Positions 15,184 through 56,584 of a DNA stretch of 64,000 bases are shown here, piece after piece; positions within the stretch are counted from its first letter, which is position 1; the number at the start of each line of letters is the position of its first letter. A program made the translations under genes and the position numbers. The DNA lies in NCBI GenBank assembly GCA_051530055.1, contig CM121342.1, positions 1,894,797 through 1,958,796 of the forward strand, in the 5' to 3' direction. The DNA is from Neoechinorhynchus agilis. Taxonomy: Eukaryota > Animalia > Acanthocephala. The notes beneath the pieces are model-generated. The model ran no database searches, was not told the origin of the DNA, and saw only the letters and a program-made list of their open reading frames with translations.

Positions 15184-15597
15184 TTACTTCTTCTTTTTGT
15201 CCGCAGTGGCCGTGGCTTTCTTTGTACCACGAATTTTCTTCTTAGCCTTTCTCAGCGTTTTTCTTTGTTTCCTGCTCTTTTTCTTTGGAACCGTCAAGCC
15301 CTGCCGAGCCAAACGGAAATTCGGTTCATACGATTTGGCATCTTTCATTGAGTCATAAATAAGGGCAAATCCACTAGACCGACCACCTCCAAAAGCAGTT
15401 CTCATTCCATAAACAAAACAGACATCAGGAGTTGTTTTGAATACAGTCGCCAAACGATCTCGAATATCTTTTTTGGATAAACAACATCGTCCGGGGTGTA
15501 GAACATCTACGACCATTTGACGACGAGCTAGCAGTCGATTCGTCATGAACTTCCTTGTTCGAATGGTAACCACACCTTTTAGGTCCGTTGAAGCCAT
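15184..15597 (-). CDS. RPS24: 40S ribosomal protein S24 (eS24), intronless
   Basis: [27 protein letters not shown] and [15 protein letters not shown] motifs; basic C-terminal tail. Confidence 0.97.
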
Positions 15598-15639
15598 TGC
15601 TCCAAATCGTTGCTTTTGTTATATGGAGAGCGCTCCTTC

Positions 15640-15649
15640 GGAAGGAAAA
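15640..15649 (-). promoter_or_regulatory. Polypyrimidine TCT/5'TOP-like start motif of RPS24
   Basis: TTTTCCTTCC on the minus strand about 45 nt upstream of the ATG; typical of animal ribosomal protein genes. Confidence 0.35.
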
Positions 15650-15859
15650 TGCACGAATGTGGGAGGACGCGGAAGAACGATGCATGACGTAATGACTTGG
15701 ATATTTGTTTTGATGCGATGATACTGATGAGCTTTTGCGCTTATGCTCAAATGATCGTTGCTGATGTTTTTCTTTTTGCGATTTGTTGTTAATCTCATTG
15801 AAACAGCTATATTTTATACCCTAGGACTTGTAAAGAAGTTCATTTCTTTATGTATTTTT

Positions 15860-16530: not shown

Positions 16531-17297
16531 CAAAGATGTTAGATCTGTGGAATTTGTCCGGTGTCCTCCATATTTTAATTTTCTTCTATCGACACTCTCG
16601 TTCACGTAAGCTCAATTTGTTCAAAATTTAGGATGATTAGGATTATTGTTTACAAGTCTTCACCCGGTAAAGCATTTATTAAAAAATGTTCTGCGAACCT
16701 CGCCGAGTTCATCATCATGATCATCAGTTAGCCTTATTTAAACGAAAAAGCTTTCAGTGGCGATTTTTGATCAATTTTTTACTATGTGACTTTTCTATTT
16801 CTCTTAAAAATGTTGCGTAATTATCGGCCTTTTTGTGTGATTAATGCCAGTGGTTTCATAATCAATTTCACGTTTGGAATTTATTTAAATTTTCAGGATT
16901 AAAAATTCGTTACAAAAAGTACTTCGTTCTTTACCTTCCGATCTTAGGTTTAGTGGATCAAATTGATCGTAACATTTTACACTCTCATTTTCCGAGTTTT
17001 AGCGATCTTGAACACGATTAACAATTCGGTTTTTAATGCTATTTAGAAGCTCCGTAAAATTATTCTCTCGCCATTAAGATAGTTCGTGCCTTTGGACCAA
17101 GCACCGTAGAATTTTTAACCTTGGAAAATGGTTAGTAGTAGATTCAGAAAGGGAATCCTGGATCATCTGTCTGACCGTTCCCATCGAAACTTTTTTTTAA
17201 TTTCTTAGGAACAATATGTTAGTGCCTAACACATACAATTGTGCACTAGTGAGCTTGTGAGCTTCAAATGTTTTTTGAAACTCTATTATTGTTGCAG

Positions 17298-18588
17298 ATG
17301 TCTGACACTGAAGAGGCAAAGGAGCAAACGAAATCCGGAAAACTTGACAACCAACCTGATGAAGAGTTTAAACTGGAATCGAATGAACACAACGAAGACG
17401 ACGATTCGTTTAGAACGCCCCGTTTGGAGGATCAGATTTGTCCGAATTGTCACACGAGCAAGCACCACGACCCTCAGATGGTTCTGTACGTAGGGACGTG
17501 TTCCCATTCATTGTGTAAACGCTGCTTGGACTCTCAATTCAAACAAGATCAAGGAAAATGTCCCACTTGTAGTGTGGATTTGCGAAAACGGTATTTTAAA
17601 CCACAAATGTTTGATGATCCCCGTCTAGATCGCGCAACGGATATCCGAAGAATGTTGGTGAAACGATACTATTTAATTGAAGAAGATTTCGATACATGCG
17701 ATGAATATTACGAGTACGTCGATGAGTTTGAGGAGATTTACTATAATCTTGTGGAAAATATAGACAAGGAAGAGACCAAGAATCGATTGGACAATTTCAG
17801 GCTGAAATATGCGATCTTTATTGCTTTCATCGTGGTCTTTAATGTGAGAGTAAAAGGTCTAGTACAAGGATTTGTTCAATAAGTCTCAGGGTAGAATAGA
17901 TCCTGTGATTGCGCGGATTAATATGGCTTTAGAAGAAGAAAAGAATAAGGCTAAACCCGGCGAAATGGAACGCGAACAGAGAATCATGAAGGTGAAGGCA
18001 GGTGTGGAGATAAAGGAAGAGATGGTGCGGAAAATTTTGTCGAAGAAAGGAGTTTCAAAGGTGAAGCCTGAAATAAAGCGAAAACCAGAGGAACCACAGG
18101 ATTCGAAATGGGCTTATATCTATAGGCCAGTTAAACGGAGAGTGCAGCGAACCATAGGGACGAAACCAATGATGAATTGGCAAACAAAAGATAAGTTTTT
18201 ACCTCATGATGTTAGTAAGCGGTTTCTTGAAGTCGTTAAGGACGTCCGAAGTGCATCGTCCAGTTTGAAATCAACGAGTGAAGCGTTGAGTGACAGAAGT
18301 GCTTTATACGGAGAAGCAAAGCAATTATCTATCCAATCGGATGATCCTGGAGGATATTCGGTCGATGTGTACATCTCTCGGCTAATGGCTCTTGGATTTT
18401 CGAATCTAAAATACGGACGTAACACTCAGTTGATGCTAGCGAACAAACAATTAAAGCCTAATCAATTTGCTCGGAATCAGCGGCCTCGTACTTTTGCAAC
18501 GGCAATGAAGCGACGTGCTCGTAGTGGAAGTCTTTCCAAATCGAAAAAGATTCCGAGAACCACTTCCGCAAACTTAAAGCGGAATTAG
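17298..18588 (+). CDS. MNAT1: CDK-activating kinase assembly factor MAT1 (RING finger); intron 17844-17889
   Basis: C3HC4 RING CPNC...CSHSLCKRC...CPTC followed by KPQMFDDPRLDRATDIRR and acidic EEDFDTCDEYYEY. A 46-nt GT-AG intron joins the two ORFs in phase 0. Confidence 0.88.
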
Positions 18589-19317: not shown

Positions 19318-22300
19318 TTACTGACTTCGAGCAGTTCTCTTAACAGAAGAGATTCCGTCTTTAAAACAGGTTTTAAGTAGAACATTTGCGTTTTCGAACA
19401 TTCCATTTTTTAGACTGACCACAATGAATTGTGCATCTTTAAAGAAAGTCCTAATCATTTTCCCAATATTTTCAGTGTGCGCCAAATCGAGAGCTGCATC
19501 GATTTCATCAAGAAAGTACACCGGAGCAGGATTGTACCGCAGCATCGCGAGTATTAAAGAAAGTGCTGCTAATGATCGTTGGCCTCCACTAAGTTCCTGA
19601 AGAGAATCCTTCCATCTACCTTCGAATCCGACCCGGATACCAAGTCCGTCGTCCAAAAGGATCCCACGGCCTGGAATGTAGAGCTCAGCCGTAGCTCCTT
19701 TTAAGAGCGATGAAAATATTTTGCCAAAATCTTCATTTACCTTTCTCCAGCAGCGAGTAACGGCATCAACTCTATAGTAGTCCCAACTGCTCACCATCCC
19801 AGTGATTTTGTTACGGTCTGAAATCACCACGTCCTTACGAAAGGTCAGTTCGCGATATTCTCGCTCTCGATCTTCCAACAAGTGAATACTTTTTAGATCC
19901 ACGATCTTTTGCAGTTCACTGTGACGTCTAGATAAATCCTTTTCCAAATTAACCATTTCTCTAAAGGTGATTTTTATTTCATCTAAATCCGCTTTCTCTA
20001 ACTCTTCCAAGACCCACTTATTAGATTTCAAAAATCGTCTTACGAATTCCTTCTTCGCATCCAAATCCTCTTTTAAACGAACCAACTCAAGTTCGGTCTC
20101 ATGCTCAGCAGTTTCGCAATTTTTGCGCTTTTTCATCAAATTGTCAATGCAAACGATAAGACTTGAGAGTTTTTGATTCTGAGCAGTCTTTGTCGCTTCA
20201 ATCTCATCAACTTGCGATCTCGCCTGCTTGTAATATAGTTGCCTCTTTTCTAATTCCGCGATTGCCTCTTTTAATCCAACCTTGGCACATTCCATGGTCT
20301 CTTTAATTTTCTGTTTATCCGTCTCCATTGACTCCAACTGAATCCGATGAACTTCAATCTCTACACGAAGTGCATCACGGCTCGATCTAATTTGCTCCAA
20401 CTTCTCTCCAACTTTTGTTTTTTCGTTAATCAATCGCTTTAAATCAGCCTCCGATGATTCTCCAATAAGACCATTTTCCGCCTCTTGAACACGTTTAACC
20501 AGATCTAGCCGTCTATTGGTCACTTCGTCAAACTCATTCTTACACTCTTTTAGTTCTTTTTGTAAGCGTGCAATCACTTCTTCCTCAGAAAACTCAATTC
20601 GATTCCGAATGTCCGCTAACTCAACTTCTATGTCGCTCCTTTTCTTTTCCAATTCCATTCTCAATTGATCACATTGCTGGCGTTTAGACAAATCGTTATC
20701 TAGTTTTGCTATTCTATTTTGAACGTCACATAATCTTTTTCTCAATGGAAACCGTCGCATTTCGGCGTCTAAACACAATTCATGATTACGATTAACACTT
20801 CCACCACTCAATATCCCAGCTGGATTCGCTTCATCGCCATCAAGCGTAACTGCAAATGAACCAATCCGCCGGTCAAACGCGATCTTATTAGCCGTAGCCA
20901 AATCTGAACACACAAAAGAGCTTCCAAACACCCATTCCATCACACCTGCCAATCTAAGATCATCCACGTGAACCAATTGAACAGCCGGCCAAACTTGCCC
21001 TCCACATTCCTCCTCAGCTGTCTTAATAACTCGATCACTAAGACAACGCGGTTGAATTGTGTCCAATGGAACAAACGTAACTCGACCACGAAGACCGCCT
21101 CGCTTCAACAACAATTTTGCGGTTTCCATTCGATCGACAACGACATTGAACAACCGTGCTTTTGCAATTGTTTCAATCGCTCTAGCGAACTTATTGTGTT
21201 CCTTTACTTGGAAAAGAGAAATTATTGGACCATAGACACGTTGCGTACGGTCGAAACCAGGCTCTGGATTATCATATCGGAACTCGTATGATGAATCGAG
21301 TTTAGATTCCAGACTAGAAGCCTCGCGCCTCAATTCTCCCAATTCACATGTAAGTTCTTTAGCCGATAAAGGATTATCTCGATCAATCTGGTTTAATCGT
21401 TCGCTCACTTCCTTCAGACTAGACTCTAGTGCGACTAAACGGCCTCGAAGCTCCTCGGGCCTAAGAGAGGAACGTCGCTTTTTTGTCATGTTCACATCAA
21501 TATTTTCATTCAGCCTCTGCAATCGAGTTTGTAAACGAGCACGGATTTTCTCAATCTCGTTTAATTGGGTCTTGAGTTTTAAAAGATACGCGTTCAGAGT
21601 AACAATAGATCCGTCGTCCGAATCCACAACCTGACCCGTTTTCGCAGCTTTTCGCGCATTTTCACACCGTCTGACTTCTTCCATCAATTGATTATACACA
21701 GTTTCGGTCGCGTCAAGATCCGAGCAAACTTTCTCATAGGGCTTACTTTGAGCGTCCATTTTTCCACAAACGATTGCGCACTCTTCTTCAATAGACCGAA
21801 GATTCTCGAGTTCGGTCTCAATGGTATTCTTCAGAGACGAAACCTTACTCTCAGCTTGACATTGTGACTTTAAAGCTTTCCGAACAATTTCACTCGCTTC
21901 CTTGTACTTATCGTCATTCGTCTCTTTCATTCGCATTGATTCTTTTTCTCTCTTACACTTCTCAATCTCGTTCAAAATCCCAGGTTTCTCATCTCTAATA
22001 CTTTTTAACCGTTCATCAACCTTCTCTACTTCTATTTGAACATTCGATAACTCCTCATTTGCCGTCACATAACGACCCAACATTACTTTTCGTTCCACTT
22101 TCGCAATCTCACGTTCAACTTCTTGAAGTTCATCGAACACTTGTCTGTCCTTTTGAATACGTCCAAGTTCCGGACCAATATTCTCGCTCATCAACGTGGT
22201 GATTTCGCTCAATTTAGTGTCCTTTCTCTCAATAACGCGCATAACGATGTCTTTTTTGCTATTATAAACCGAAGTTCCAGCAGTTGTGTCGATCAATCGC

Positions 22301-22785
22301 AACACATCTAAGGGCTTCATCCCTAAGACCTTCACAATCTGTCCTTGCATAACTAGAAAGTGAGGATTATTGGTGTCCATTCCCTGACTGGCCAACGTCT
22401 CCCACAAAACCTTATTAGTAACCACTGATCCGGCGATTGTGAGTTTGGACTGGCCGCGAGTGTCCACCATCCTCGTGATTGAGAGTTCATTAAGGTGTTT
22501 GTAGGCAAATGGACGATCTTTAACTTCGCTCATATCGAACACTACGGTCACCGCGGCTGATTCAACTCCACCAGTGCCGTGTTTGTAGATAAGATCACGC
22601 AGGTTCTGGGCTCGCATTTGAGTTGTGCTAGCCATTCCTAGCGTAAAGCATATGCCGTCCAGAATATTCGATTTTCCCGTTCCGTTCAAACCAGTGATTG
22701 CGTTAAAATGCTCGTCAAATGGACCGATCTCAGTTCGCTGAGGATACGATTTGAAGCCGTCCAAGATAACCTTCTTTATATGCAT
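19318..22785 (-). CDS. SMC2: Condensin subunit SMC2, intronless, about 1155 aa
   Basis: MHIKKVILDGFKSY, FNAITGLNGTGKSNILD (Walker A), HFLVMQGQI, hinge region, LSGGQRSL signature, LDEIDAALD (Walker B). Confidence 0.97.
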   Translation of the reverse strand: MHIKKVILDGFKSYPQRTEIGPFDEHFNAITGLNGTGKSNILDGICFTLGMASTTQMRAQNLRDLIYKHGTGGVESAAVTVVFDMSEVKDRPFAYKHLNELSITRMVDTRGQSKLTIAGSVVTNKVLWETLASQGMDTNNPHFLVMQGQIVKVLGMKPLDVLRLIDTTAGTSVYNSKKDIVMRVIERKDTKLSEITTLMSENIGPELGRIQKDRQVFDELQEVEREIAKVERKVMLGRYVTANEELSNVQIEVEKVDERLKSIRDEKPGILNEIEKCKREKESMRMKETNDDKYKEASEIVRKALKSQCQAESKVSSLKNTIETELENLRSIEEECAIVCGKMDAQSKPYEKVCSDLDATETVYNQLMEEVRRCENARKAAKTGQVVDSDDGSIVTLNAYLLKLKTQLNEIEKIRARLQTRLQRLNENIDVNMTKKRRSSLRPEELRGRLVALESSLKEVSERLNQIDRDNPLSAKELTCELGELRREASSLESKLDSSYEFRYDNPEPGFDRTQRVYGPIISLFQVKEHNKFARAIETIAKARLFNVVVDRMETAKLLLKRGGLRGRVTFVPLDTIQPRCLSDRVIKTAEEECGGQVWPAVQLVHVDDLRLAGVMEWVFGSSFVCSDLATANKIAFDRRIGSFAVTLDGDEANPAGILSGGSVNRNHELCLDAEMRRFPLRKRLCDVQNRIAKLDNDLSKRQQCDQLRMELEKKRSDIEVELADIRNRIEFSEEEVIARLQKELKECKNEFDEVTNRRLDLVKRVQEAENGLIGESSEADLKRLINEKTKVGEKLEQIRSSRDALRVEIEVHRIQLESMETDKQKIKETMECAKVGLKEAIAELEKRQLYYKQARSQVDEIEATKTAQNQKLSSLIVCIDNLMKKRKNCETAEHETELELVRLKEDLDAKKEFVRRFLKSNKWVLEELEKADLDEIKITFREMVNLEKDLSRRHSELQKIVDLKSIHLLEDREREYRELTFRKDVVISDRNKITGMVSSWDYYRVDAVTRCWRKVNEDFGKIFSSLLKGATAELYIPGRGILLDDGLGIRVGFEGRWKDSLQELSGGQRSLAALSLILAMLRYNPAPVYFLDEIDAALDLAHTENIGKMIRTFFKDAQFIVVSLKNGMFENANVLLKTCFKDGISSVKRTARSQ

Positions 22786-23084
22786 TAAGATTACCAATTA
22801 AAAATCGAGGAGTCTATGAAAATCGCAAATGCCCAAAATTCTGACTGGTCACGACGAGTGACGTATATCGCACTCACAATAATTCTTTTTAGCTTAAGAG
22901 CGCTATCGTAAAGTATAAAATGTGATTATGTTGTTTTTAAGATGCTTTTACTCTTAAAATTCTGGTTTGGCTCCTCGTCAAAATCACCCTTTTTAGATTA
23001 CGAGCTACTAAAATGTTTTTGTTGAAGCCTCTTTTTTTTAATTGAGCGAAACTGCTTTATTTTTCCCTATGGAAACGATCATCC

Positions 23085-26000
23085 TTATTCCTTCTGTTCG
23101 TCGCTTCCTTTAAATACGTCCAACCAGATTTTCCGGATTGCCTGCTTTGCCTCCAGGTATGCTTCCTTGTATTGTTCTCCTGATGAGTCTTCATTTGCCA
23201 ACACTTTCTTCAAATCGCTTACAGTTTCGCCAAGACGATCCAACTCCTTTTCGGACTGTCTTAGATTTATCCTTTCAGAACGAAGCTCACCCTCCAGCTC
23301 CTGTACCTTAAGCTCAAGCTCTCCAATCAACTGATCTTTTATTTTCACAGATTCCAACGTGCGATCCATTTCAATAAGTTCGTTTTGGTATTCAATCGTG
23401 CAACCATTCACTAGAGCTCCTTCATTAGACGTCTTTGCGAGTGATGCCAATCTTTGTTCCATTTTCATGACAAATTGAGCAGGTTCCTCGCCTTCTCGAA
23501 ACTCACACATCTTCTTCTCCTCCTGGTCAGCCACATCCGTGACATTTCTATAATAGAACCTATCAGCGCCATTCGATTGAGCACAAACTCGTTTCACAGT
23601 CGCATCAATCTCTGCTCTGGTCATTGGGTACTCACTGATGGTCAAAATTGAACTAAGATCCGTTTGACTAAGGTATCGCTTCTTATGTCTGTCAAAGAAC
23701 GATATAGCGAATAAAACTTTCGGTAGCTTTGTGGAATACGTTGAAGCAGTCTCTATTACGTATCCGTATGGATTTAAGCGTCGTTTAAGTGGTGGTGAAG
23801 AATCAGTCTTTATCGATCCTGGACGTTTTCTATTTCCATCACCTTTGATACACTGAACTTTACTAAGAACTTGAGCGATCGATTGCGCATGACAGGTACC
23901 TAAAAGACCATTGAGACACTCAGCGAACAAGTAAAGCTCAAAAGTCTGCTCTCTTGTACATTCCTTTTGGCCAAGAAGATCCGCTAGTGACCGTGTTGTT
24001 AAAAAGAAATTGCCGGATTTGGCTAAGCGACTGGCGTGGACCACCAACGACGGAGGATGTTTACTTAAATCGTACGCTGAACGAAGACTACCGCTCGTGG
24101 AATCGTCAATAATGATTGCATCGTCGTCTTTGATTACAGGAGTCTGCTTATTCTTAAACTCCTCCGCGTACATGTCACGCACTTGTTGCCATTCAGCATC
24201 ATTCGCTGGCATCAGATTCCATACATCCGGGCACAAAAACGTCACCGTCTCCGGCCCTGAATCCCGTATGTACTCGAATTCTAGAAACTTTGTCCATCTT
24301 GAACAACGACTCAAGTCCAATCCACTCAAATCCTTATCACATGCGTCCGTCCTCCGTGTATTTGCGGGGGTAGTGGGTAAACGAAATGAAGGGCTTCGAT
24401 AAAGTTGTTTAAATGACATTTTTCCTAAATAGCTCAGATTGTTCTAAAAAAAGAGAGTTGCAATTTTTGTTTGGGTTTTCGATCCCAGAATTATCTTTGA
24501 TTAAATGCAACCAAAATCTCTCCAATATGCTGGACCTACAAAACGATGAACACCTACAAAAAATCTTTAAGTATATGTTCTTTGGTTACGAGAAAAATAG
24601 ATATTGATTTTTTAATTGAGAAATATTTCGTCCGTCTCGTCGGAGTTCTTCAGATTACTTGTAAGTTTTTTAAATAAGTGACTTCGACACGAAGATCAAT
24701 AAAAAAATTTTATAATCACCAAAGAACACATAATTGAACAACTTAACAAAAATCTTAAAATTGTGTTTGTGTGTGCGCTCGCGAGATCCGTAATGATCCA
24801 CATGATAAAAGGATTAAAAGATGAAATTTAAATATGATGAAAAATTTTAAGAAATGAAATTAAAAAAAAGAAGTTATATATCCCAAAATACTTGATTATG
24901 AGTAATTCTAAATCGTGAATTTACAAAAAAAGTGCGAGCTAGAGCACACCTTTTTCTAATTTGGGTGTGGTAAATTAATAGTGCTAACTATTCGATTTTT
25001 AATAAGTGAAATTTAAAAAGGGATGTGAACTCGATCTTATTTTCTCGTTCACAGATTGAGAATAATAATGATAACACATTTAAAAAGAACGTATTTTTAA
25101 TATCTCTCAAATATTTTATTTGAGGTCCGATGCGGTGAAACCTCACAAATACTTTTTTATTTTGTAAGTGAGAACTTACCTATGATGATAATATTCATTA
25201 AAAACGTTCCAAAGCGGTCGAAGACAAAAACAACAATATCCAATTTAATCAATAACCCCAGTAGACCTCCCATATCGACACAAGAAAGAAGGGCGATGCG
25301 ACATACTGCATCGCGTTCTGAATAAAATTACAAAATTACTCGGACACTCATGTCCTTACTTTTATATTAACGATTCGACTTCTCCAAATTAAAATTCAGA
25401 AAAAAATATATAAGCTAGAGCCTATTTACTCTTGACCAGAACACGATTGATCAATTATCATCAGGTTTGTTTATAAAATGTAGGATTTTCAGGCGTATTT
25501 CTCAATGCGAGTCCAAGTGGAAGATTAAAAGAAAAAAGTTATGGTGCATTTACCTAAAATAGGAGCACAATTGTTAGAATGCCGCCAAAAAGCAAAAAAA
25601 AAGTTTAGCTTCGTCTTCATAACACCCACCTTTTGCCTGATTGGAAAATATTCCCCCATGACGGACTCCTGTATCTACATGTCCTTATTGCAGTATTCAC
25701 TAAAGTTCCCAAATTAGCTGGATCTGCACCATCCAATTCTGGATCCCAGTATCCTCCAATGGCAACCACGTCCTCTCTAGCATTTTTAGATCTTCTATAG
25801 CCTAACAAATACTTGATCAAGTGGCTCTGGTGTATTTTTCCACTGGCACTGCTACCGGATCCATTTTCATGTTCGCATAAATCACAAACTTCTCGATGCA
25901 TTTGACAAACGTCTGGTATTTCCAAGAGCATCACCTTTACGTGGTGTCGAAGACACTTTGGTTCTTGAATATCCCCGGAAACCATGGAACAAGGTCGATC

Positions 26001-26270
26001 AACTAAATCACGATCCATAATATGATACCGACATGGACCTGTTAGTAGAGTAACTGCGGTCTTTTTACCCATTTGCTTATAGCTAAGGTTCATCCTGATG
26101 AACGTACTCGGTAAATATATCCTCGGGAACCGGAAACGAAGACTATTTGCGTTTAGATAGGTTTCGTCGTTTGTAACTATCAGACGCGGCAAACAGATTG
26201 AATCCTCTGCTGGATCAGCTCTTTGTCGTCGGCTTGAACTTCGACGTATCAAAGGTGAGCGACGTCTCAT
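23085..26270 (-). CDS. CCAR1: CCAR1/CCAR2 (DBC1) family protein, split by a 1.3-kb intron/insertion inside the DBC1 domain
   Basis: 5' part KVMLL...AIGGYWDPELDGADP...NTAIRTC; 3' part LSGLDLSRCSRW, ETVTFLCPDVW, FELYLFAE and EF-hand-like FFDRHKKRYL. These match my recollection of CCAR1 motifs. Candidate intron 25629-24352. Confidence 0.8.
24344..25671. mobile_element. AT-rich insertion in CCAR1 flanked by a near-direct repeat CATGT(A)GATA; contains a Penelope-like relic
   Basis: On the minus strand, CATGTAGATA at 25681-25672 and CATGTGATA at 24343-24335. Removing the insert plus the upstream repeat gives the continuous peptide TAIRTC-DKDLSGLDLS. Confidence 0.5.
24600..24653 (-). ncRNA. Hammerhead-ribozyme-like core, probably degenerate
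   Basis: CTGAAGA-AC-TCCG ACGAGA CGGA-C-GAAA-TATT...AATA-TC: core nucleotides, stem II and stem III with an AUC triplet are present. Stem I does not pair convincingly. Confidence 0.4.
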
Positions 26271-26317
26271 CTTAAAAAAATAGAAATGTGATCAACGAAC
26301 AAAGTGAAATAAAATGA
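26271..26317 (-). promoter_or_regulatory. 47-nt U-rich intercistronic spacer ending TTTTTTTAAG|ATG; candidate trans-splice acceptor
   Basis: Lies between the ANKZF1 stop (26320-26318) and the CCAR1 ATG (26270); no room for a promoter. Confidence 0.55.
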
Positions 26318-28090
26318 TCACTTTTTGCGATGAGCACTCACGCATTCTACGCCACAAAACGAAAGGTCATTCGAACCATAAAAGAACCATTCAGATTCGT
26401 CGTCACATAAACCTTTACCACATTGAGCACATAGATTCTTTGCTTTTTGTTCAATTTTCTTCTTCTTTTTTCGCCGAGGATTCGTTTTAGCCTTTTGCTT
26501 AGGAATAATAGAGATTTCGTCTTCAACACCCGCAACAACCTTAATAACGACACATTCTACTTTCTTAAGTTTTGAGGTTGACTTCATTTGTGGAATTTTT
26601 GTTGGCGGCGGTGGCGATGGTAATGGCGGCGGCGGCGGCGGCGGCGACGGTGTAAGTACAATGGCATCCAGCGGTGTGTTTACTACACGTTCGTCCAACT
26701 TGGCCTCTTGAATCCAAAACAGCGGGCATTTAACAATCCGATCAAAGCATTCCTTCAACGCAGATAGATTTGGATATCGTGATTTTGTGAACATTGGTGC
26801 TTTCCTCAATCTGTCATCTTTTCTTCCAATCCCTATTGATTCATATATCCAATCGTTTAAATGTGGTGGATGTCTTGTGAATATTAATTGACAACAAGCA
26901 ACATCATCCTGAATTGATGTAAGAAAAGTTCGAATTTTCTAAAAAAAGTTGTTTTACCAGAAATCAATAGAAGGTCATGTGAGCACATTACCTCTTTAAA
27001 ACGTTGAAGATTTGCACGTCTTAAGGTAGCTCCTGCACTTTTAATACCCCGTTTACGATTGTCAGCCACGTCTTGAGCAAATCCTTGCTTACGTCTTAAC
27101 TTCACATCGTCCTATACCGTCCTCCCCGCATACAAGGACTTGTGATTTACGACATAGCTATGGAAGGAGGCGTGTCGTGTGATTTGTCCACTAACAAAAT
27201 CCAATACACCACCGGCAAAATGGCCGCTTTGGGTAACCAACATGATTACGATTACCTGAATGGATTTGAGGTGCTCAACTTCAACCGACTGTTTTTTAGG
27301 AAATAGACATCGGTGAAGTCCAAAAGCAAGACGTTTATTGGTGAATTCACAAGGCGCCTCGATTAAATGGTCGCAGTGTTGAGGGAAAAAGTAGAAATAA
27401 TTGATTTGATCACATGGCCGTAAGTAGAAAGCGTAAACCTTATCATCATGGCAATCTCCAAGTCTTAATAGAAAGTTGTAAGTTCGGGGAAAAGTTTGAA
27501 ATCCGATTGGTTTCGGAGTATTTATTGTCAGTTTTTTTTAAATAACGTGAACAAGATTGTGCGCATCCGAAAAACCAATCGGATTTAAAATTTTTTAAGC
27601 GCCAGAACTTACAACCATCAATGAACAATTCAATCCCCGTCAAATTTAATATAGAAAAAATCAAAAAGAAAAAGGTAAGAGATTGCCACACGTGTACACA
27701 GCTCAAACCAAGTCAAAAAGTCCACTCTTCCACCTTTTTCTTTCGCTTTAAACACAGCTTTTGCACGAGAAACCAAATCATGTTCATCGTTCCGAAAATG
27801 TTCCCTCTAAAAAGAATTGATTTGCCTTCTTTTTAAATATTTGATGTAATGCTCACCAATTCATCTCTTGTTGAAAACTCTAAGTTACAATGAGAACAAA
27901 GAAACGAGTGGTCATAATCGAGCCATTCGTACGATGAAGTTCGACTTATGCACTGGCTCTTATTTGAACATTCTTGTTTTTCCTGATTATTGATGATTGA
28001 ATCCAAAATCTGTTGAGCTTCGACGTCATACAGATTAAAACATATCACGGATCGTTCCTCAGAAACACCCCTCTTATCAAATGACGTCAT
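26318..28090 (-). CDS. ANKZF1: ANKZF1/Vms1-like tRNA endonuclease (C2H2 finger, VLRF1 domain, C-terminal treble-clef finger), multi-exon
   Basis: Spliced reading gives CSHCNLEFSTRDEL-REHFRNDEH, IMLVTQSGHFAGGV, HASFHSYV-LRRKQGFAQD...SAGATLRRAN, DDRLRKAPMFTKSRYP and a terminal CAQCGKGL...FCGVECVSAHR. Confidence 0.88.
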
Positions 28091-28380: not shown

Positions 28381-31300
28381 TGAATTATTCTATTTTTTTG
28401 AAGTCCGGTTTGCTTGTAACTTTTATTCTGTATTTTTTAAGTGTGGCCTTTTTTTACAGCTGATAATTTTCCTATTAGGCACAAAGCCCGTCACCGATAT
28501 CTTGGACGAGGGAAGTGCATGAAATCACACTTGATACCCTGCTGAACCATCACACGGTTACGAGTTTGTTCGCATCGTTCCGCATCGTCGGATATCTTCC
28601 CCAAGGAGGCGGGGTTCCCTTCGTCGAGGCATTTCGCCCCCTTGGTTGTTCGTCATTGGCGGAAATGGACATTGAACCCTTTAGACCAAACTGGGATCAG
28701 AGCTTTTAGTCCACTTGACCACCGCTAACACAACTACGAAATGTACAAACTCTACCATTTAATTTCTTAATTTTGGGCCAATTAAATTATTCTATTTTTG
28801 AACGGTTTGCTTGTAACTTTTATTCTGTATTTTAAGTGTGGCCTCTTTTTTACAGCTGATAATTTTCCTATTAGGCACAAAGCCCGTCACCGATATCTTG
28901 ACGAGGGAAGTGCATGAAATCACACTTGATACCCTGCTGAACCATCACACGGGTTACGAGTTTGTTCGCATCGTTCCGGATCGTCGGATATCTTCCCCCA
29001 AGGAGGCGGGGTTCCCCTCTGTCAACGCATTTCGCCCCTCTTGGTTGTCTTGGGTCATTGGCGGAAATGGACATTGAACCCTTTAGACCAAACTGGGACT
29101 GAGCTTTTAGTCCACTTGACCACCTCAACACAACTACGAAATGTACAAACTCTACCAATTTTAATTTTTTAATTTTGGGCCAATTGAATTATTCTATTTT
29201 TTTTGAAGTCCGGTTTGCTTGTAACTTTTATTCTGTATTTTTTAAGTGTGGCCTCTTTTTACAGCTGATAATTTTCCTATTAGGCACAAAGCCCGTCACC
29301 GATATCTTGGACGAGGGAAGTGTATAAAATTACACTTAATGCCCTGCTGAACCATCACACGGTTACGAGTTAGTTCGCATCGTTCCGGATCGTCGGATAT
29401 CTTCTCCAAGGAGGCGGGGTTCCCTTCGTCGAAGCATTTCGCCCCCTTGGTTGTTCGTCATTGGCGGAAATGGACATTGAACCCTTTAGACCAAACTGGG
29501 ATCAGGAGCTTTTAGTCCACTTGAACACCTCTACACAACCACGAAATGTACAAACTCAACCAATTTTAATTTTTTAATTTTGGGCCAATTGAATTATTCT
29601 ATTTTTTTGAAGTCCGGTTTGCTTGTAACTTTTATTCTGTATTTTAAGTGTGGCCTCTTTTTACAGCTGATAATTTTCCTTTTAGGCACAAAGCCCGTCA
29701 CCGATATCTTGGACGAGGGAAGTGCATAAAATTACACTTAATGCCCTGCTGAACCATCACACGGTTACGAGTTTGTTCGCATCGTTCCGGATCGTCGGAT
29801 ATCTTCCCCAAGGAGGCGGGGTTCCCTTCGTCGAAGCATTTCGCCCCCTTGCTTGTTCGTCATTGGCGGAAATGGACATTGAACCCTTTAGACCAAACTG
29901 GGATCAGGAGCTTTTAGTCCACTTGAACACCTCAACACAACTACGAAAATGTACAAACCTACCAATTTTAATTTTTTAATTTTGGGCCATTGAATTATTC
30001 TATTTTTTTGAAGTCCGGTTTGCTTGTAACTTTTATTCTGTATTTTTTAAGTGTGGCCTCTTTTACAGCTGATAATTTTCCTATTAGGCACAAAGCCCGT
30101 CACCGATATCTTGGACGAGGGAAGTGTATAAATACACTTAATGCCCTGCTGAACCATCAACGGTTACGAGTTTGTTCGCATCGTTCCGGATCGTCGGATA
30201 TCTTCCCCAAGGAGGCGGGGTTCCCTTCGTCGAAGCATTTCGCCCCCTTGCTTGTTCGTCATTGGCGGAAATGAACATTGAACCCTTTGGACCAAACTGG
30301 GATCAGGAGCTTTTAGTCCACTTGACCACCTCAACACAACTACGAAATGTACGAACTCTACCAATTTTAATTTTTTAATTTTGGGCCAATTGAATTATTC
30401 TATTTTTTTGAAGTCCGGTTTGCTTGTAACTTTTATTCTGTATTTTAAGTGTGGCCCCTTTTTACAGCTGATAATTTTCCTATTAGGCACAAAGCCCGTC
30501 ACCGATATCTTGGACGAGGGAAGTGTATAAAATTACACTTAATGCCCTGCTGAACCATCACACGGTTACGAGTTTGTTCGCATCGTTCCGGATCGTCGGA
30601 TATCTTCCCCAAGGAGGCGGGGTTCCCTTCGTCGAGGCATTTCGCCCCCTTGGTTGTTCGTCATTGGCGGAAATGGACATTGAACCTTGGACCAAACTGG
30701 ATCAGGAGCTTTTAGTCCACTTGACCACCTCAACACAACTACGAAATATACAAACTCTACCAATTTTAATTTTTAATTTTGGGCCAATTGAATTATTCTC
30801 TATTTTTTTGAAGTCCGGTTTGCTTGTAACTTTTATTCTGTATTTTTTAAGTGTGGCCTCTTTTTACAGCTGATAATTTTCCTATTAGGCACAAAGCCCG
30901 TCACCGATATCTTGGACGAGGGAAGTGTATAAAATTACACTTAATGCCCTGCTGAACCATCACACGGTTACGAGTTTGTTCGCATCGTTCCGGATCGTCG
31001 GATATCTTCCCCAAGGAAACGGGGTTCCCTTCGTCAAAGCATTTCGCCCCCTTGGTTGTTCGTCATTGGCGGAAATGGACATTGAAACCTTTAGACCAAA
31101 CTGTGATCAGGAGCTTTTAGTCCACTTGACCACCTCAACACAACTACGAAATGTACAAACTCTACCAATTTTAATTTTTTAATTTTGGGCCAATTGAATT
31201 ATTCTATTTTTTTGAAGTCCGGTTTGCTTGTAACTTTTATTCTGTATTTTTAAGTGTGGCTTCTTTTTACACAGCTGATAATTTTCCTATTAGGCACAAA

Positions 31301-33362
31301 GCCCGTCACCGATATCTTGGACGAGGGAAGTGCAATAGAAATCACACTTAATGCCCCGCTGAACCATCACAAGGTTACGAGTTTGTTCGCATCGTTCCGG
31401 ATCGTCGGATATCTTCCCCAAGGGAGGCGGGGTTCCCTTCGTCAACGCATTTCGCCCCCTTGGTTGTTCGTCATTGGCGGAAATGGACATTGAACCCTTT
31501 AGACCAAACTGGGATCAGGAGCTTTTAGTCCACTTGACCACCTCAACACAACTACGAAATATACAAACTCTACCAATTTTAATTTTTTAATTTTGGGCCA
31601 ATTGAATTATTCTATTTTTTGAAGTCCGGTTTGCTTGTAACTTTTATTCTGTATTTTAAGTGTGGCCTCTTTTACAGTTGATAATTTTCCTATTAGGTGT
31701 CAAAGCCCGTCACCGATATCTTGGACGAGGGAAGTGCATAAAATTACACTTAATGCCCTGCTGAACCATCACACGGTTACGAGTTAGTTCGCATCGTTCC
31801 GGATCGTCGGATATCTTCCCCGAGGAAACGGGGTTCCCTTCGTCAAAGCATTTCGCCCCCTTGGTTGTTCGTCATTGGCGGAAATGAACATTGAACCCTT
31901 TGGACCAAACTGGGATCAGGAGCTTTTAGTCCACTTGACCACCTCAACACAACTACGAAATGTACAAACTCTACCAATTTTAATTTTTTAATTTTGGGCC
32001 AATTGAATTATTCTATTTTTTTGAAGTCCGGTTTGCTTGTAACTTTTATTCTGTATTTTAAGTGTGGCCTTTTTTTACAGCTGATAATTTTCCTTTTAGG
32101 CACAAAGCCCGTCACCGATATCTTGGACGAGGGAAGTGCATAAAATTACACTTAATGCCCTGCTGAACCATCCGACGGTTACGAGTTTGTTCGCATCGTT
32201 CCGGATCGTCGGATATCTTCCCCAAGGAAACGGGATTCCCTTCGTCAACGCATTTCGCCCCCTTGGTTGTTCGTCATTGGCGGAAATGGACATTGAAACC
32301 TTTGGACCAAACTGTGATCAGGAGTTTTTAGTCCACTTGACCACCTCAACACAACTACGAAATGTACAAACTCTACCAATTTTAATTTTTTAATTTTTGG
32401 CCAATTGAATTATTCTATTTTTTTGAAGTCCGGTTTGCTTGTAACTTTTATTCTGTATTTTTTAAGTGTTGCCTCATTTTACAGCTGATAATTTTCCTTT
32501 TAGGCACAAAGACCGTCACCGATATCTTGGACGAGGGAAGTGCATAAAATTACACTTAATGCCCTGCTGAACCATCACACGGTTACGAGTTTGTTCGCAT
32601 CGTTCCGGATCGTCGGATATCTTCCCCAAGGAGGCGGGGTTCCCTTCGTCAAAGCATTTCGCCCCCTTGGTTGTTCGTCATTGGCGGAAATGGACATTGA
32701 ACCCTTTAGACCAAACTGGGATCAGGAGCTTTTAGTCCACTTGACCACCTCAACACAACTACGAAATGTACAAACTCTACCAATTTTAATTTTTTAATTT
32801 TGGGCCAATTGAATTATTCTATTTTTTTGAAGTCCGGTTTGCTTGTAACTTTTATTCTGTATTTTAAGTGTGGCCTCTTTTTACAGCTGATACTTTTCCT
32901 ATTAGGCACAAAGCCCGTCACCGATATCTTGGACGAGAGAAGTGCATAAAATTACACTTGATACCCTGCTGAACCATCACACGGTTACGAGTTTGTTCGC
33001 ATCGTTCCGGATCGTCGGATATCTTCCCCGAGGAAACGGGGTTCCCTTCGTCAAAGCATTTCGCCCCCTTGGTTGTTCGTCATTGGCGGAAATGGACATT
33101 GAAACCTTTAGACCAAACTGGGATCAGGAGCTTTTAGTCCACTTGACCACCTCAACACAACTACGAAATGTACAAACTCTACCAATTTTAATTTTTTAAT
33201 TTTGGGCCAATTGAATTATTCTATTTTTTTGAAGTCCGGTTTGCTTGTAACTTTTATTCTGTATTTTAAGTGTGGCCTCTTTTTACAGCTGATAATTTTC
33301 CTTTTAGGCACAAAGCCCGTCACCGATATCTTGGACGAGGGAAGTGCATAAAATTACACTTA
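28381..33362. repeat. Tandem satellite, about 12.3 units of about 396-409 bp, each with a GC-rich structured half and an AT-rich half
   Basis: AGGCACAAAGCCCGTCACCGATATC, or a close variant, recurs 13 times from 28477 to 33306. Confidence 0.98.
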
Positions 33363-33430
33363 ATTACCCTTCGCTTCCCAATAACAATGAATCGGTGGTG
33401 GGCTTTGTGCCTAAAAGGAAAATTATCAGC
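33288..33430. repeat. Inverted repeat closing the 404-bp array
   Basis: 33288-33318 is the exact reverse complement of 33400-33430 (31 bp); the arms extend to 40 bp with 2 mismatches. Confidence 0.9.
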
Positions 33431-39792: not shown

Positions 39793-42333
39793 CAATTTGA
39801 TTATTTGTTCGAATGTAAGATGTCCACGTGTCTCCGATGTAAGTAATTCCTCCGAATTCGATCAACATACAAATCGCGTTTGTGAATGACGAGTAAAGCG
39901 ACTAGTAGCTTGTTTGTTAAAAAATTGAAAACAACGATTTATAAGATACATTTGACAGAGAAACATTTTTATGGGTTTGGATGTAAATTGGTTTGATGAC
40001 CTACCATGTTCAGTTTACGCAGTTTATATTCGAGGTTAAAAATATATATTTAGACTGATGTCAAAACGTAACGAAATCCAAGAGTTCAAATAGAATGATA
40101 TTGGATTTTCATTTCATTGGAATCAAATATACACATATCATCGTACTCCACTGAAGATCGCCAGTGATCCGGTAAGTGATTGTATCTTAATAATATCTCC
40201 TAAATCAATTATTTAGATGTAAATAGATTGAAGATGTACTGATTTGCGTATAAAGACATTGTTTTGGGTTAGGTCTGGAAAGCTTTTCAGCAACCTCGGT
40301 GAGTGTAAAAAATTGGAATTTATTCATGTAATGTTGATGCGCTAACATAATTGTCAACATGTTTTATCGAAGTCTCAAAACGGTAAACTTGGCCGGTTCA
40401 GGAAACAATCGGTATGAAGCAAAGCTTAGCAGGCAGTGCAATCGAGTCGCCGAGAAAATTCTACTTTCTCAACAAGTTGCATTTCATCTTTGAGTCTTAA
40501 GTTATAGTTTCGTAATTGTCTCTTTCCCAAGGTCAGCGTCAACGTAATCAGTTCAAAGTTCACAAAATTATTTGCAAGTGGAATTGTGGGGTTTCTGATA
40601 ATAAATCGCATACTTTGCGATGATATATCACTTGCAATGAAAACAAAATGATTATTTAAATCATAGATTATTTCAGTGTATTTTCTCGACGGCCCAAAAT
40701 GTCGCGACTCATTCAATGACGGCTATAGTTGCTCGCGTTAATATATCTTAAACAGTAGCCTGCGGAATCTTTTCTATCCGATTTTGTTCAGTTATATCGA
40801 ATTATTGTCTTTTAATTTTCTTACATTCATCATCCGATGTGCTCATACCTTTTACTGGTTAGTTTTAGATAAATATCGTAAAGATGTTCTAACCTGCTAC
40901 TGAAAATTAGACTCATAAAATTGAACGTAGACTGTTGTTGGATGGCACTTCGGATTTTGACAGCATTCCATCAAGAGCTCCTTATACTGTATGACGGTTT
41001 GTATATGACATCTAGATAAATCTGTCATTTTTTGTATATCATGAAAATGATTTGACTATGACCTAAAATTTAATTTTCCATGGTGTTCATAAGAGGCAAA
41101 AGGATACTATTGACCCGAATTTACTTTATCCAGTAACTAGAGAAAATAAGTGCATAAAAGGCAAAATGTTGATAATTTTCCTACAAAAGTGAATAAAGTT
41201 ACTATTTTTAACTTAGAAGTATGATAAAATTTATCTTACGCCTGGCTAGCTTATTGCAATTTTTCTCTAAGTGTTGTTAACATTCCTTGCCGTGTAAGAG
41301 ATGCTCACCTCAACACTTACAGAAAAAGTATGAATTCCTCACGTTCTGCCCGAAAAATATCGAGTGAAAACAAAAAATAAGTTTGTGAACTTATTATTGT
41401 GACAGATAATCGAAATTCAAGTCACAGAACTAGAATTTCGTCTGATTAATTTGTTTTAAAGCATGTTATGAATGGGGTTAAATAGCTAAGGCAATTCCTC
41501 CAATAGTGAATGGCGACAAAAGGCAAACAAGACCAAAGACTAAAAATCACAAAAGTGACAGATTTCTGCGGAAGCAATGGCAATAATGGAACAAATGCAA
41601 TTCCACAATTAAGGTGATTTCTTACGCAAATTCATACAAAATGTCTTTTGGAAATACCACGGTTTGTGAAAAAGAAGGTTAGACTCTTCCACGTAAATTC
41701 CACGGTCATCTACACAACCTCATCAATCCAATTTGATGATAGGTCGAAGGATTGCGCAAATGGTAGCGATGAATGATGTAAACGAGTTTTCTTGCATGGA
41801 CCATCTCTTAATGAGCACCTGATGTTGCGTATTTATCATGGACTGAAAATAGGCACACTTTCCGGATGGTGGTGGCACGGTTGAGAAGATTCACACCCGC
41901 ATTAGTGCCACATTTCCGGCTCTAATCTTTTAGCACCGGGTTTTTTTGTCAAAAGGAGGAGTATACCCCACCGGATGATATCCGAGATATCGTCGACACC
42001 AGGCGGAAAATCAGGGAACATCATCTGTTTATTTCGTTGGCACCGTCGCAAGGGTTAAGATGACGAACAAAAATAGCACCAAACGCACATTTACAGGATG
42101 CGCTTTTTCGCGGCGAATGTCTCTTTCTTGCTTCCAGTGCTGTAGCTCCCTTAGTAACTAATTATGGATAAACCTACACATAAAAGAAGAAGGGAGAAAT
42201 TCTGTGCTATAGACTAGCAGGAAAGCCTCAACTGATTCACACAACCAAACGAGCATATATCTTGGCGTCTTCATCGACAAAAGGTACTCTCTCTTTTCCA
42301 TCTACAACCGGTACTAACCGTCTCAACAACTAG

Positions 42334-49919: not shown

Positions 49920-50520
49920 AAGAATGAGAGAGAACAGCCCTTGGGGGACCCTCGTTGATTGCTGAGGTGTTCGAGGCTATGCTCCCTATTTCGATAAATT
50001 GCAATCTATTGTTTAGAAAGGATTTCAAACATTTGATTTGCCAGGCGGCAAGACCAAATTTAAAGCAAGTATCAAGTAGAAGATTGTGATCAACGCAATC
50101 AAAAGCGTTATGAATTTCGATTAGAATGAGTCGAGCGATAAATAAAGGTTGTGCATAGATGTTATGAAGAAGAGAATCGTAGAAGCCAACCATGAAATCG
50201 AACTGAATGGGTGAAATTTTTCGATTGAAGATTGGCAGAAGGTGTGCTTTAAAACATCACTTTAAGACATTAGAGAAGGTAAGATAGAGACGGGTCGAAA
50301 ACTTGAGGTGGATATAAGTTAACCTGCATTCGGGAACAGGGTTACCTGAGCTGTTTCAAGGCAATTAGGGAAGATTACGGTCTTGAAACTTTGGTTGATT
50401 GTGTGGGTAAGTTGATCGATTAAATCTGGGATGATAAAGCGTAGAGCCCAGTTGGGAATAAGAGAAAATTTGCGTGGTAGTTTCCGAAGAAGCATGAGGA
50501 TATCATACGTGGAAATCATG
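49920..50520 (-). mobile_element. Decayed LINE reverse-transcriptase fragment (CR1/L2/Jockey-like)
   Basis: LTHTINQSFKTVIFP, FRPVSILP, NAFDCVDH, LKSFLNNRLQF, NEGPPRAVLS; contains stops. Confidence 0.85.
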
Positions 50521-50599
50521 GGAGGTGAAAACAGCAGAAGCAGAGACCAGTTGCTTAATTCTGGAAGGAGATGACGGTTTGTAGGGGGGTATAGGCGTC

Positions 50600-53500: not shown

Positions 53501-53800
53501 TGTCCATGAAAGACACTCTCCTAACAATTTTCACAAAGCAGAGCAAACGCCTGATGTCCCATCCGCCGCAATTCGCTCCCCATATTACCCACCCTCATAG
53601 AAAGCGCAATCCATCCTCCTTCAAACCGCACAAATCGCGAACCAAAACCCACCTTCATTCCTTCCTTCCTGCTGCTCAGTCATATTTAAATAGTAACTGA
53701 ATCGAAGGAAAGAGCACAACCAACTATACTTCGGCAACCAAAGATACATGGAACGGGTAGCTATAGTTGTTTACTTTCAAAGTAAAAATAAATAAATAAA
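50600..53800 (+). mobile_element. Near full-length but decayed APE-RT LINE (CR1/L2 group): Cys-rich ORF1, ORF2 with frameshifts and a probable internal deletion, (AATA)n tail
   Basis: ORF1 CSSPDC...CGFC; endonuclease YSNARSL, ISETWL, GGGISI, GVYRPP, AGDFN; RT LDLSKAFDSV, GVPQGAILSPLLFNIF, YADD, LGLQFQQDLKW; tail AAAATAAATAAATAAAA at about 53785. Confidence 0.9.
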
Positions 53801-56412: not shown

Positions 56413-56584
56413 CCCTCGATTATATAAGCACGTATTTGTTATTTTAAAACACGACATCAGTCGACGACGAAAAGTAAATCTACATGATATCTGGGCATTT
56501 AGCCATTAGAAAGTTTGCATTATTATACGTCTTTGTGAAAATATTCAACATTATATCGTGTATTTGGCAAAACTTGAGGTAAAA

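What the first reader, a model, noticed from the sequence alone, without database searches (positions are those of the whole stretch)
26271..26317. ANKZF1-CCAR1 looks like an operon: 47-nt U-rich spacer ending AG|ATG
Seen: two conserved, co-directional genes. The upstream stop is followed by TCATTTTATTTCACTTTGTTCGTTGATCACATTTCTATTTTTTTAAG and then the downstream ATG. The spacer has no AATAAA on the sense strand and no space for a promoter. SMC2 follows about 300 bp after CCAR1 on the same strand. Established: this layout is typical of polycistronic units resolved by spliced-leader trans-splicing (nematodes, Oikopleura, flatworms). Inference: an operon of two or three genes.
Basis: partly seen in the sequence, partly recalled or inferred. 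Interest (0 to 1): 0.75.

Follow-up and report, generated by a model that had tools for sequence, protein, structure and literature searches.

The report
Tight ANKZF1-CCAR1 junction: operon unproven
In the thorny-headed worm Neoechinorhynchus agilis two unrelated conserved genes lie 47 bases apart, and a splice acceptor ends exactly at the second gene's start codon; this fits an operon resolved by leader trans-splicing, but a consensus in-frame splice donor 71 bases upstream fits ordinary splicing just as well, and no RNA data could be reached to decide.

Summary
On the minus strand an ANKZF1/Vms1-like gene ends at TGA 26320-26318. A 47-nt spacer (57% T, no poly(A) hexamer) ends in T7-AAG. The ATG of a CCAR1/DBC1-family gene follows at 26270, and intronless SMC2 starts 299 nt after the CCAR1 stop. 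The genome is Neoechinorhynchus agilis (Acanthocephala), for which no paper found here reports a spliced leader or operons.

New points:
- The CCAR1 homology to full-length relatives begins exactly at the acceptor. The usual S1-like N-terminal part was not found anywhere in the genome, so Met 26270 is a credible start.
- A consensus donor TGC|GTGAGT lies 24 nt before the ANKZF1 stop. With AAG|ATG it bounds a 71-nt intron-like unit in phase 0/0 (chance about 2%, or 0.8% in phase).
- SMC2 has AATAAA upstream and its own donor/acceptor pair, so a third operon gene is poorly supported.

I found no leader gene and could reach no transcript. The scan has noted the same acceptor-at-ATG and short-gap pattern on other DNA of this genome. 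Verdict: a plausible two-gene co-transcription unit whose mode of resolution is undecided.

The parts
28088..28090 (-). Start codon of the ANKZF1/Vms1-like gene, itself directly preceded by an acceptor-like GTTGTTCAG
   Evidence: the N-terminal C2H2 finger continues across a 50-nt intron 27856-27807
26318..26914 (-). Last exon (open frame) of the ANKZF1/Vms1-like gene: end of the VLRF1 domain, a Pro-rich and a Lys-rich stretch, and the VATC treble clef. Stop TGA at 26320-26318
   Evidence: Pfam bVLRF1 80-140 and VATC 6-38 of 43 up to the last residue
26336..26341 (-). Consensus 5' splice site GTGAGT after codon TGC (exon would end at 26342), 24 nt before the ANKZF1 stop, phase 0
   Evidence: GT[AG]AGT occurs 0.256 times per kb per strand; the chance of one 40-120 nt upstream of a given AG is 2.0%, or 0.8% in one given phase
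26271..26341 (-). 71-nt intron-like unit (GTGAGT ... T7-AAG) that spans the ANKZF1 stop codon and the whole spacer; removing it would join the two ORFs in frame
   Evidence: phase 0, 199 open codons upstream, 217 downstream; homology- or frame-supported introns in the window are 46-62 nt, one candidate 107 nt
26271..26317 (-). The 47-nt T-rich spacer of the finding; no poly(A) hexamer; contains the palindrome-forming GTGATCA/TGATCAC
26271..26286 (-). Polypyrimidine tract and 3' splice site TTTCTATTTTTTTAAG, ending exactly at the ATG
25630..26270 (-). CCAR1/DBC1-family exon 1 from ATG 26270 to the inferred donor AAAAG|GTGGGT (25630|25629); residues 2-200 are homologous to residues about 225-590 of full-length CCAR1 proteins
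23085..24432 (-). CCAR1/DBC1-family exon 2 (rest of DBC1, LAIKA, coiled coil). The exact acceptor is inferred. NCBI model ACOME3_005027 covers only this part
23037..23061 (-). AATAAA (23061-23056) and ATTAAA (23042-23037) after the CCAR1 stop
22814..22877 (-). GTGAGT ... TTTTCATAG, a 64-nt intron-like unit ending 28 nt upstream of the SMC2 ATG; single copy, not an SL RNA gene
19318..22785 (-). Intronless SMC2 gene (1155 aa)

Best explanation
ANKZF1 and CCAR1 form one co-transcribed, operon-like unit driven from the ANKZF1 side. The T-rich tract plus AAG at 26286-26271 is a working 3' splice site that creates the 5' end of the CCAR1 message exactly at its AUG. The most likely mechanism is trans-splicing of a short leader RNA encoded elsewhere. 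ANKZF1 mRNA would then end inside the 47-nt spacer without a canonical poly(A) hexamer, as in Ciona- or Oikopleura-type operons. Shown: the layout, the gene identities, the acceptor, the absence of AATAAA, and that CCAR1 homology starts at the acceptor. Inferred: co-transcription, use of the acceptor, and addition of a leader. SMC2 is probably not part of the same unit.
For: The 47-nt same-strand spacing of two unrelated conserved genes leaves no room for a promoter in the spacer. The spacer is the most T-rich of about 80 short same-strand gaps in 264 kb. No poly(A) hexamer follows the ANKZF1 stop, whereas CCAR1 and the ORF at 34639 have one. AG abuts the ATG in 5 of 9 gene starts of the window (p = 7e-5). 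In 264 kb, 30 of 38 strong acceptors that sit within 30 nt of the first ATG of an ORF of at least 80 codons have no GT[AG]AG donor 40-160 nt upstream. CCAR1 exon 1 aligns from residue 2 to internal positions of 900-1400-aa homologues that carry an S1-like domain upstream. A full-length homologue finds nothing for its first 224 residues anywhere in this genome (PF14444 none). No upstream coding exon is therefore expected, and an ATG exactly at the acceptor is what a start-type acceptor needs; it would be about a 1-in-64 coincidence for an internal exon. A non-coding cis leader exon would carry out-of-frame AUGs: 7 in the last 91 nt before the donor, the nearest 4 nt from the exon end.
Against: No transcript of this locus was available and no leader RNA gene was identified. 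The bdelloid leader gives 0 hits. The donor-plus-Sm-site pattern finds mainly a degenerate 112-bp satellite. The acceptor is not unpaired: a consensus GTGAGT lies 71 nt upstream in the same phase, and in nematodes an upstream donor turns trans- into cis-splicing (established knowledge, not tested here). The 79% of acceptors without a donor does not differ from the control sites (88%). Spliced leaders and operons are not reported for Acanthocephala in the papers searched. SMC2 is not next to CCAR1 or ANKZF1 in the bdelloid Rotaria.
Confidence: 0.4

Rival explanations
1. CCAR1 has its own transcription start inside the last exon of ANKZF1. A short first exon ends at TGC|GTGAGT (26342|26341) and is cis-spliced over a 71-nt 5' intron to AAG|ATG. 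The genes overlap but are not an operon.
For: There is a consensus donor, a length of 71 nt close to the genome's 46-62-nt (up to 107-nt) introns, and a strong T tract. Similar donor/acceptor pairs lie just upstream of other start codons in the window: MAT1 GTGAGC 49 nt, SMC2 GTGAGT 64 nt, ANKZF1 GTAAGT about 163 nt, myosin GTACTC 50 nt with a TACTAAC. Four of 8 starts have GT[AG]AG, p about 0.01. This reading explains both the donor and the ATG without a coincidence.
Against: The would-be leader exon is coding DNA with 7 out-of-frame AUGs in its last 91 nt, one of them 4 nt from the exon end. The putative leader exons of SMC2 and myosin have none in 45 nt or more. In the larger 264-kb sample, donors upstream of start-proximal acceptors are not clearly enriched (21% against 12% in controls). 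GTRAGT also occurs unspliced inside exons: myosin 43629, CCAR1 23635 and 23506, HSP90-like gene 3347.
Confidence: 0.22
2. Read-through transcripts are cis-spliced across the ANKZF1 stop codon (26342^26270), giving an in-frame ANKZF1-CCAR1 conjoined mRNA and protein, either as the main product or alongside separate mRNAs.
For: Donor and acceptor are both phase 0, with 199 and 217 open codons on either side. The four cysteines of the VATC finger (CxxC ... CxxxC) lie upstream of the donor, so only VSAHRKK would be lost. CCAR1 has lost its ancestral N-terminal module. The RNA fold pairs the donor region with the acceptor/AUG region, bringing the two sites together (z = -2.5).
Against: An internal exon starting exactly with ATG is about a 1-in-64 coincidence. 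The VATC match runs to the last residue before the stop, so the unspliced reading looks like the conserved protein end. No functional link between the two proteins is known, and the fusion is not seen among the 110 homologues found. No protein containing exon 1 joined to anything else is on record.
Confidence: 0.2
3. There is no splicing at all. CCAR1 is transcribed from a compact promoter inside the 3' end of ANKZF1, with a start site in or just before the spacer, and AAG|ATG and GTGAGT are both chance matches.
For: Donor-like and acceptor-like pairs do occur by chance, for example GTAAGT plus a strong acceptor 92 nt on inside the HSP90-like exon. RPS24 in the same window has a pyrimidine-rich start region and no acceptor, so not every gene uses one.
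Against: It needs two independent coincidences: AG at the ATG behind a T7 tract, and a consensus donor at intron distance. AG|ATG is strongly enriched at gene starts here.
Confidence: 0.1

Closest known systems
Ciona intestinalis and Oikopleura dioica operons (one spliced leader, minimal intercistronic regions)
   Same: Same-strand unrelated genes lie less than 100 bp (Ciona) or at most 60 bp (Oikopleura) apart, the acceptor sits at or next to the downstream start, there is no SL2-type specialisation, and a canonical poly(A) signal is often absent (PMC7986045; the last point is from general knowledge).
   Different: Neither a leader nor a polycistronic RNA is shown here, the phylum is different, and a consensus cis donor lies 71 nt upstream of the acceptor.
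C. elegans operons (SL2 type, about 100-nt intercistronic region with a U-rich element; rare SL1 type without a spacer)
   Same: There is a U-rich stretch between the upstream 3' end and the trans-splice site, and the downstream AUG is close to the acceptor.
   Different: There is no AAUAAA for the upstream gene, and only 47 nt must hold both the 3' UTR and the spacer. The nematode SL models were not searched.
Bdelloid rotifer SL trans-splicing (23-nt leader GGCTTATTACAACTTACCAAGAG; PMC3795323 Table 1, PMC1925144)
   Same: It is the closest related group in which a spliced leader is documented; acanthocephalans belong to the same clade (Syndermata).
   Different: That leader is absent from this genome at up to 3 mismatches, and monogonont Brachionus showed no leader (PMC1925144), so inheritance is not assured.
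Conjoined / read-through fusion genes with an intron spanning the upstream stop codon
   Same: There is a GT...AG unit of normal intron size across the stop codon, the reading frame is preserved, and the two genes are otherwise independent.
   Different: The downstream exon begins exactly with a credible start codon, and the upstream protein ends with a complete conserved domain.

Membership tests
SL-resolved eukaryotic operon | Two or more same-strand genes with a very short intercistronic distance | tested here: met
   47 nt from stop to ATG. The CCAR1-SMC2 distance is 299 nt, which is not short.
SL-resolved eukaryotic operon | 3' splice site just upstream of the downstream cistron | tested here: met
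   T7-AAG ends at the ATG.
SL-resolved eukaryotic operon | The acceptor is unpaired (no usable 5' splice site upstream on the same pre-mRNA) | tested here: not met
   Consensus TGC|GTGAGT lies 71 nt upstream in phase 0. Whether it is used is unknown.
SL-resolved eukaryotic operon | The genome encodes an SL RNA (leader exon, donor, Sm site) | tested here: inconclusive
   The bdelloid leader gives 0 hits. The pattern of donor plus Sm site gives 61 hits against 11 in the control, 51 of them in a degenerate 112-bp array at C1:528237-540697. A second pattern stays at control level. The look-alike upstream of SMC2 is single copy and unstructured.
SL-resolved eukaryotic operon | The downstream mRNA carries the leader, and a polycistronic precursor exists | not testable with these tools
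   No transcript-derived protein or contig of this locus is in the collections. RNA-seq exists as PRJNA1223661 (PMC12690905).
Ordinary spliceosomal intron (5' UTR intron or conjoined gene) | GT...AG boundaries with consensus donor, pyrimidine tract and a length typical of the genome | tested here: met
   GTGAGT ... TTTCTATTTTTTTAAG, 71 nt; supported introns are 46-62 nt, one candidate 107 nt. An AAG acceptor is also inferred for myosin intron 1.
Ordinary spliceosomal intron (5' UTR intron or conjoined gene) | Exon junction seen in RNA | not testable with these tools
   No RNA data could be reached.
CCAR1/DBC1 family (downstream gene) | DBC1 (inactive Nudix) and LAIKA domains; S1-like and SAP domains in canonical members | tested here: met
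   DBC1 and LAIKA are present. S1-like and SAP are not detected in the gene or, for S1-like, in the genome, so this is a shortened family member.
ANKZF1/Vms1 family (upstream gene) | VLRF1 release-factor-like domain, with a C-terminal VATC finger in animal members | tested here: met
   bVLRF1 matches in three exons. The VATC match is 17.9 bits, below the 26.6 cut-off, but sits at the expected C-terminal position. Ankyrin repeats were not seen.

The most novel reading that the evidence does not exclude
A dual-use splice acceptor in an acanthocephalan operon. On one ANKZF1-CCAR1 precursor, the same AAG|AUG site receives either a trans-spliced leader, giving a separate CCAR1 mRNA that starts at its AUG, or the in-frame donor 71 nt upstream, giving an ANKZF1-CCAR1 fusion. 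A hairpin that pairs the donor with the first CCAR1 codons and the acceptor/AUG with the last ANKZF1 codons sets the balance. This would also be a well-defined operon junction in a phylum where neither spliced leaders nor operons are published.
Probability: 0.12. Interest if true: 0.75.

Novelty: new member of a known kind. Interest (0 to 1): 0.45.

Why it matters
Spliced-leader trans-splicing and operons have a patchy distribution in animals. Within the rotifer-acanthocephalan clade, a leader is documented only for bdelloids and was not found in a monogonont. A proven operon junction in an acanthocephalan would extend both phenomena to a parasitic lineage with a 46-Mb genome. It would bear on whether the leader is ancestral to the clade, and it would require trans-splicing-aware re-annotation; here the public model covers only half of CCAR1. 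This junction is a good test case because public RNA-seq can separate three outcomes: leader at 26270, junction 26342^26270, or capped ends inside ANKZF1. If only cis-splicing is found, it warns that acceptor-at-ATG signatures noted across this genome are not by themselves evidence for trans-splicing.

Tried and rejected
1. Transcript evidence. Word-based protein searches with SMC2 and both CCAR1 exons returned only the genome's own ORFs or models. Exact look-ups found no other contig. There are no RNA contigs for this locus.

2. Bdelloid leader in the genome: none at up to 3 mismatches.

3. Leader as a cap on retroelements. The LINE-like element in the window (5' end about 50607) shares its 5' end with only 5 other copies, so that end is not a common tag. 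A k-mer screen of 264 kb for short isolated repeats found nothing leader-like.

4. Generic SL RNA gene patterns. These gave one degenerate 112-bp satellite and single-copy chance hits. The look-alike upstream of SMC2 is single copy with no structure and was rejected.

5. Idea that acceptor-at-ATG is generally the end of a cis 5' UTR intron. This is suggestive in the window (4 of 8 starts, p about 0.01) but not borne out in 264 kb (21% against 12% in controls), so it is not adopted as a general rule.

6. Synteny. Rotaria SMC2 has other neighbours. The Logan contig L037 looked like a shared N-terminus, but it carries a normal S1-like exon upstream.

7. A solved structure for the ANKZF1 C-terminus: nothing useful.

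I did not try to read further genome sequence through other tools.

9. Spliced models were searched exon by exon by reference.

Full report
**What is there.** The finding lies on the minus strand. Read in that direction, an ORF ends with TGA at 26320-26318.

Pfam identifies the upstream gene as ANKZF1/Vms1-like:
- VLRF1 release-factor domain in three exons: 27112-27243, 26884-27105 and 26318-26914.
- A C-terminal VATC treble clef running to the last residue.

The downstream gene belongs to the CCAR1/DBC1 family:
- DBC1 profile 2-51 in ORF 25617-26270, and 50-119 in ORF 23085-24419.
- A LAIKA domain after that.

SMC2 is a single 1155-codon ORF (22785-19318) whose best named hits are SMC2. The CCAR1 stop (23085) and the SMC2 ATG (22785) are 299 nt apart. 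The spacer is 57% T, the highest of about 80 same-strand ORF gaps of 200 nt or less in 264 kb. It contains none of eleven poly(A) hexamers.

**Organism.** The public protein identical to CCAR1 exon 2 is KAL7670089.1, a hypothetical protein ACOME3_005027 of Neoechinorhynchus agilis. The assembly (46.2 Mb, 102 contigs) matches the published draft (PMC12690905). That paper does not contain the words operon, polycistron, leader or intron. Full-text searches for Acanthocephala with spliced leader or trans-splicing gave nothing relevant. In related groups, bdelloid rotifers have a 23-nt leader (PMC3795323), and a monogonont EST study found none (PMC1925144).

**Is Met 26270 the start of CCAR1?** An in-frame TGA lies 24 nt upstream. 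A phmmer search of 1.84 billion representatives with exon 1 gave 110 hits. I ran it because the word search had left the N-terminal 146 residues without any relative. Residues 2-200 align to internal positions (about 225-590) of 900-1400-aa CCAR1 proteins. Those proteins carry an S1-like domain upstream, then SAP and LAIKA downstream. The N. agilis ORF begins inside the Arg/Ser-rich linker that follows the S1-like domain in relatives.

A full-length homologue searched against the whole N. agilis genome hits only the window's exons. Its residues 225-418 map to 25671-26270, and nothing matches its first 224 residues. The S1-like Pfam model finds nothing either, although its controls were silent, so that test alone is weak. 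The gene is therefore a shortened CCAR1 whose homology starts exactly at the acceptor, and Met 26270 is a credible start. The public annotation covers only exon 2.

**The acceptor.** TTTCTATTTTTTTAAG|ATG is a strong 3' splice site. AG abuts the start codon in 5 of 9 recognisable gene starts in the window (ANKZF1, CCAR1, MAT1, myosin, the ORF at 34639) against 5.8% of all ATGs, p = 7e-5. I read the window plus the next 200 kb, 264 kb in all. There, 38 strong acceptors sit within 30 nt of the first ATG of an ORF of at least 80 codons. Thirty of them have no GT[AG]AG 40-160 nt upstream. This fits leader trans-splicing, but control sites show 88%, so it is not a discriminating result.

**The new complication.** Twenty-four nt before the ANKZF1 stop the coding sequence reads TGC|GTGAGT. 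With AAG|ATG this bounds a 71-nt unit that has every sequence mark of an intron and is phase 0 at both ends. Splicing it would fuse ANKZF1, minus its last seven residues, in frame to Met1 of CCAR1.
- Introns that homology or frame continuity support in this window are 46-62 nt (myosin 44360-44415, 46609-46657, 48011-48072; ANKZF1 27856-27807; MAT1 17844-17889). One candidate is 107 nt.
- GT[AG]AGT occurs 0.256 times per kb per strand. The chance of one 40-120 nt upstream of a given AG is 2.0%, or 0.8% in one phase.
- On the other side, such hexamers also sit unspliced within exons: myosin 43629, CCAR1 23635 and 23506, and HSP90-like gene 3347 with a good acceptor 92 nt on. A chance donor is therefore possible.
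- A non-coding leader exon ending at this donor would carry seven out-of-frame AUGs in its last 91 nt, one of them 4 nt from its end. This argues against a simple 5' UTR exon.
- An internal exon beginning exactly with ATG would be a 1-in-64 coincidence. This argues against a pure fusion gene.
- The region folds so that GUGAGUG pairs with codons 4-6 of CCAR1 and the last ANKZF1 codons pair with the acceptor/AUG. An inner GUGAUCA/UGAUCAC hairpin sits between them (z = -2.5, 2 of 200 shuffles). This could juxtapose the splice sites or mask the donor.

**The third gene.** CCAR1 has AATAAA and ATTAAA 24 and 43 nt after its stop. SMC2 has an acceptor 28 nt before its ATG and a GTGAGT 64 nt upstream of that acceptor. 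This looks like a separate start with a short 5' intron rather than the same kind of junction. The segment also resembles an Sm-type RNA (donor, hairpin, AAUUUUGG), but it is single copy and unstructured.

**Search for a leader.**
- The bdelloid leader is absent.
- A donor-plus-Sm-site pattern gave 61 hits against 11 for the control. Fifty-one lie in a 112-bp tandem array at C1:528237-540697, whose copies differ at many positions without compensation. A variant pattern was at control level.
- The LINE-like element in the window is not leader-capped.
- Earlier notes of the scan state that RNA data show a leader on two other genes of this genome. I could not check this and do not count it as support.

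**Weighing.**
- A co-transcribed unit resolved at the AAG|AUG site by a leader explains the spacing, the T tract, the missing poly(A) signal and the ATG at the acceptor. It leaves the in-phase donor as a 1-2% coincidence.
- An own promoter with a cis 5' intron explains both donor and ATG, but it needs a start site and an AUG-laden leader inside coding DNA.
- A conjoined mRNA explains donor and phase, but not the ATG or the complete ANKZF1 end.

My estimates are 0.40, 0.22 and 0.20, with 0.10 for no splicing at all. The first and third readings both imply co-transcription (about 0.6 together) and are not exclusive. The same acceptor-at-ATG and short-gap pattern has been noted by this scan on other DNA of this genome, so this is one more instance: the tightest one between two well-identified genes, and one that public RNA-seq can resolve.

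Noticed in passing
window 28381-33364: Tandem array of a 402-bp unit, 12.4 copies, 95% matches, directly upstream of the ANKZF1 start region. Its relation to the ANKZF1 promoter is unknown.
   Followed up: partly
window 23085-26270 (-): CCAR1 is split by an intron of about 1.2 kb (25629-24433, boundaries inferred), far longer than the 46-62-nt introns nearby. A YRSPS[W/F] motif occurs on both sides of it. The public model ACOME3_005027 (450 aa) covers only exon 2 plus an unexplained MGEKGK start that I could not place in the window. The gene also lacks S1-like and SAP domains.
   Followed up: partly
window 50607-53700 (+) and 50404-50583: LINE-like element with an AP-endonuclease domain. Six copies in the genome share its exact 5' end. 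It is inserted next to a roughly 180-bp dispersed repeat that has at least 30 copies at 76-85% identity.
   Followed up: partly
G000:C1:528237-540697: 112-bp tandem array in which about half the units keep AG|GTGAGC ... AATTTTGG (a donor plus an Sm-site-like motif 51 nt on). It gave 51 of 61 genome hits of the pattern against 11 control hits. The copies are degenerate, and the putative exon part was not read.
   Followed up: partly
window 15184-15720 (-): RPS24 is an intronless 137-codon ORF with a pyrimidine-rich (TOP-like) upstream region and no acceptor before the ATG. It is a likely non-trans-spliced gene in the same window.
   Followed up: no
window 42284-42333 (+) and 17249-17297 (+): Myosin heavy chain and MAT1 each have an intron-like unit of about 50 nt ending exactly at the start codon. 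Myosin has GTACTC ... TACTAAC ... CTAG|ATG. MAT1 has GTGAGC ... TTGCAG|ATG.
   Followed up: partly
window 55367-57247 vs 62699-64579; L-loci about 161.5-178 kb vs 190-206.6 kb of the 264-kb stretch: There are two tandem segmental duplications: a 7.3-kb offset at the end of the window and a 28.6-kb offset further downstream. Both show identical ORF and splice-site contexts.
   Followed up: no
window 3256-3347 (-): Inside the HSP90/GRP94-like exon, a consensus GTAAGT is followed 92 nt later by a strong acceptor. The Pfam match runs through it uninterrupted. This is an example of an apparently unused splice-site pair.
   Followed up: no
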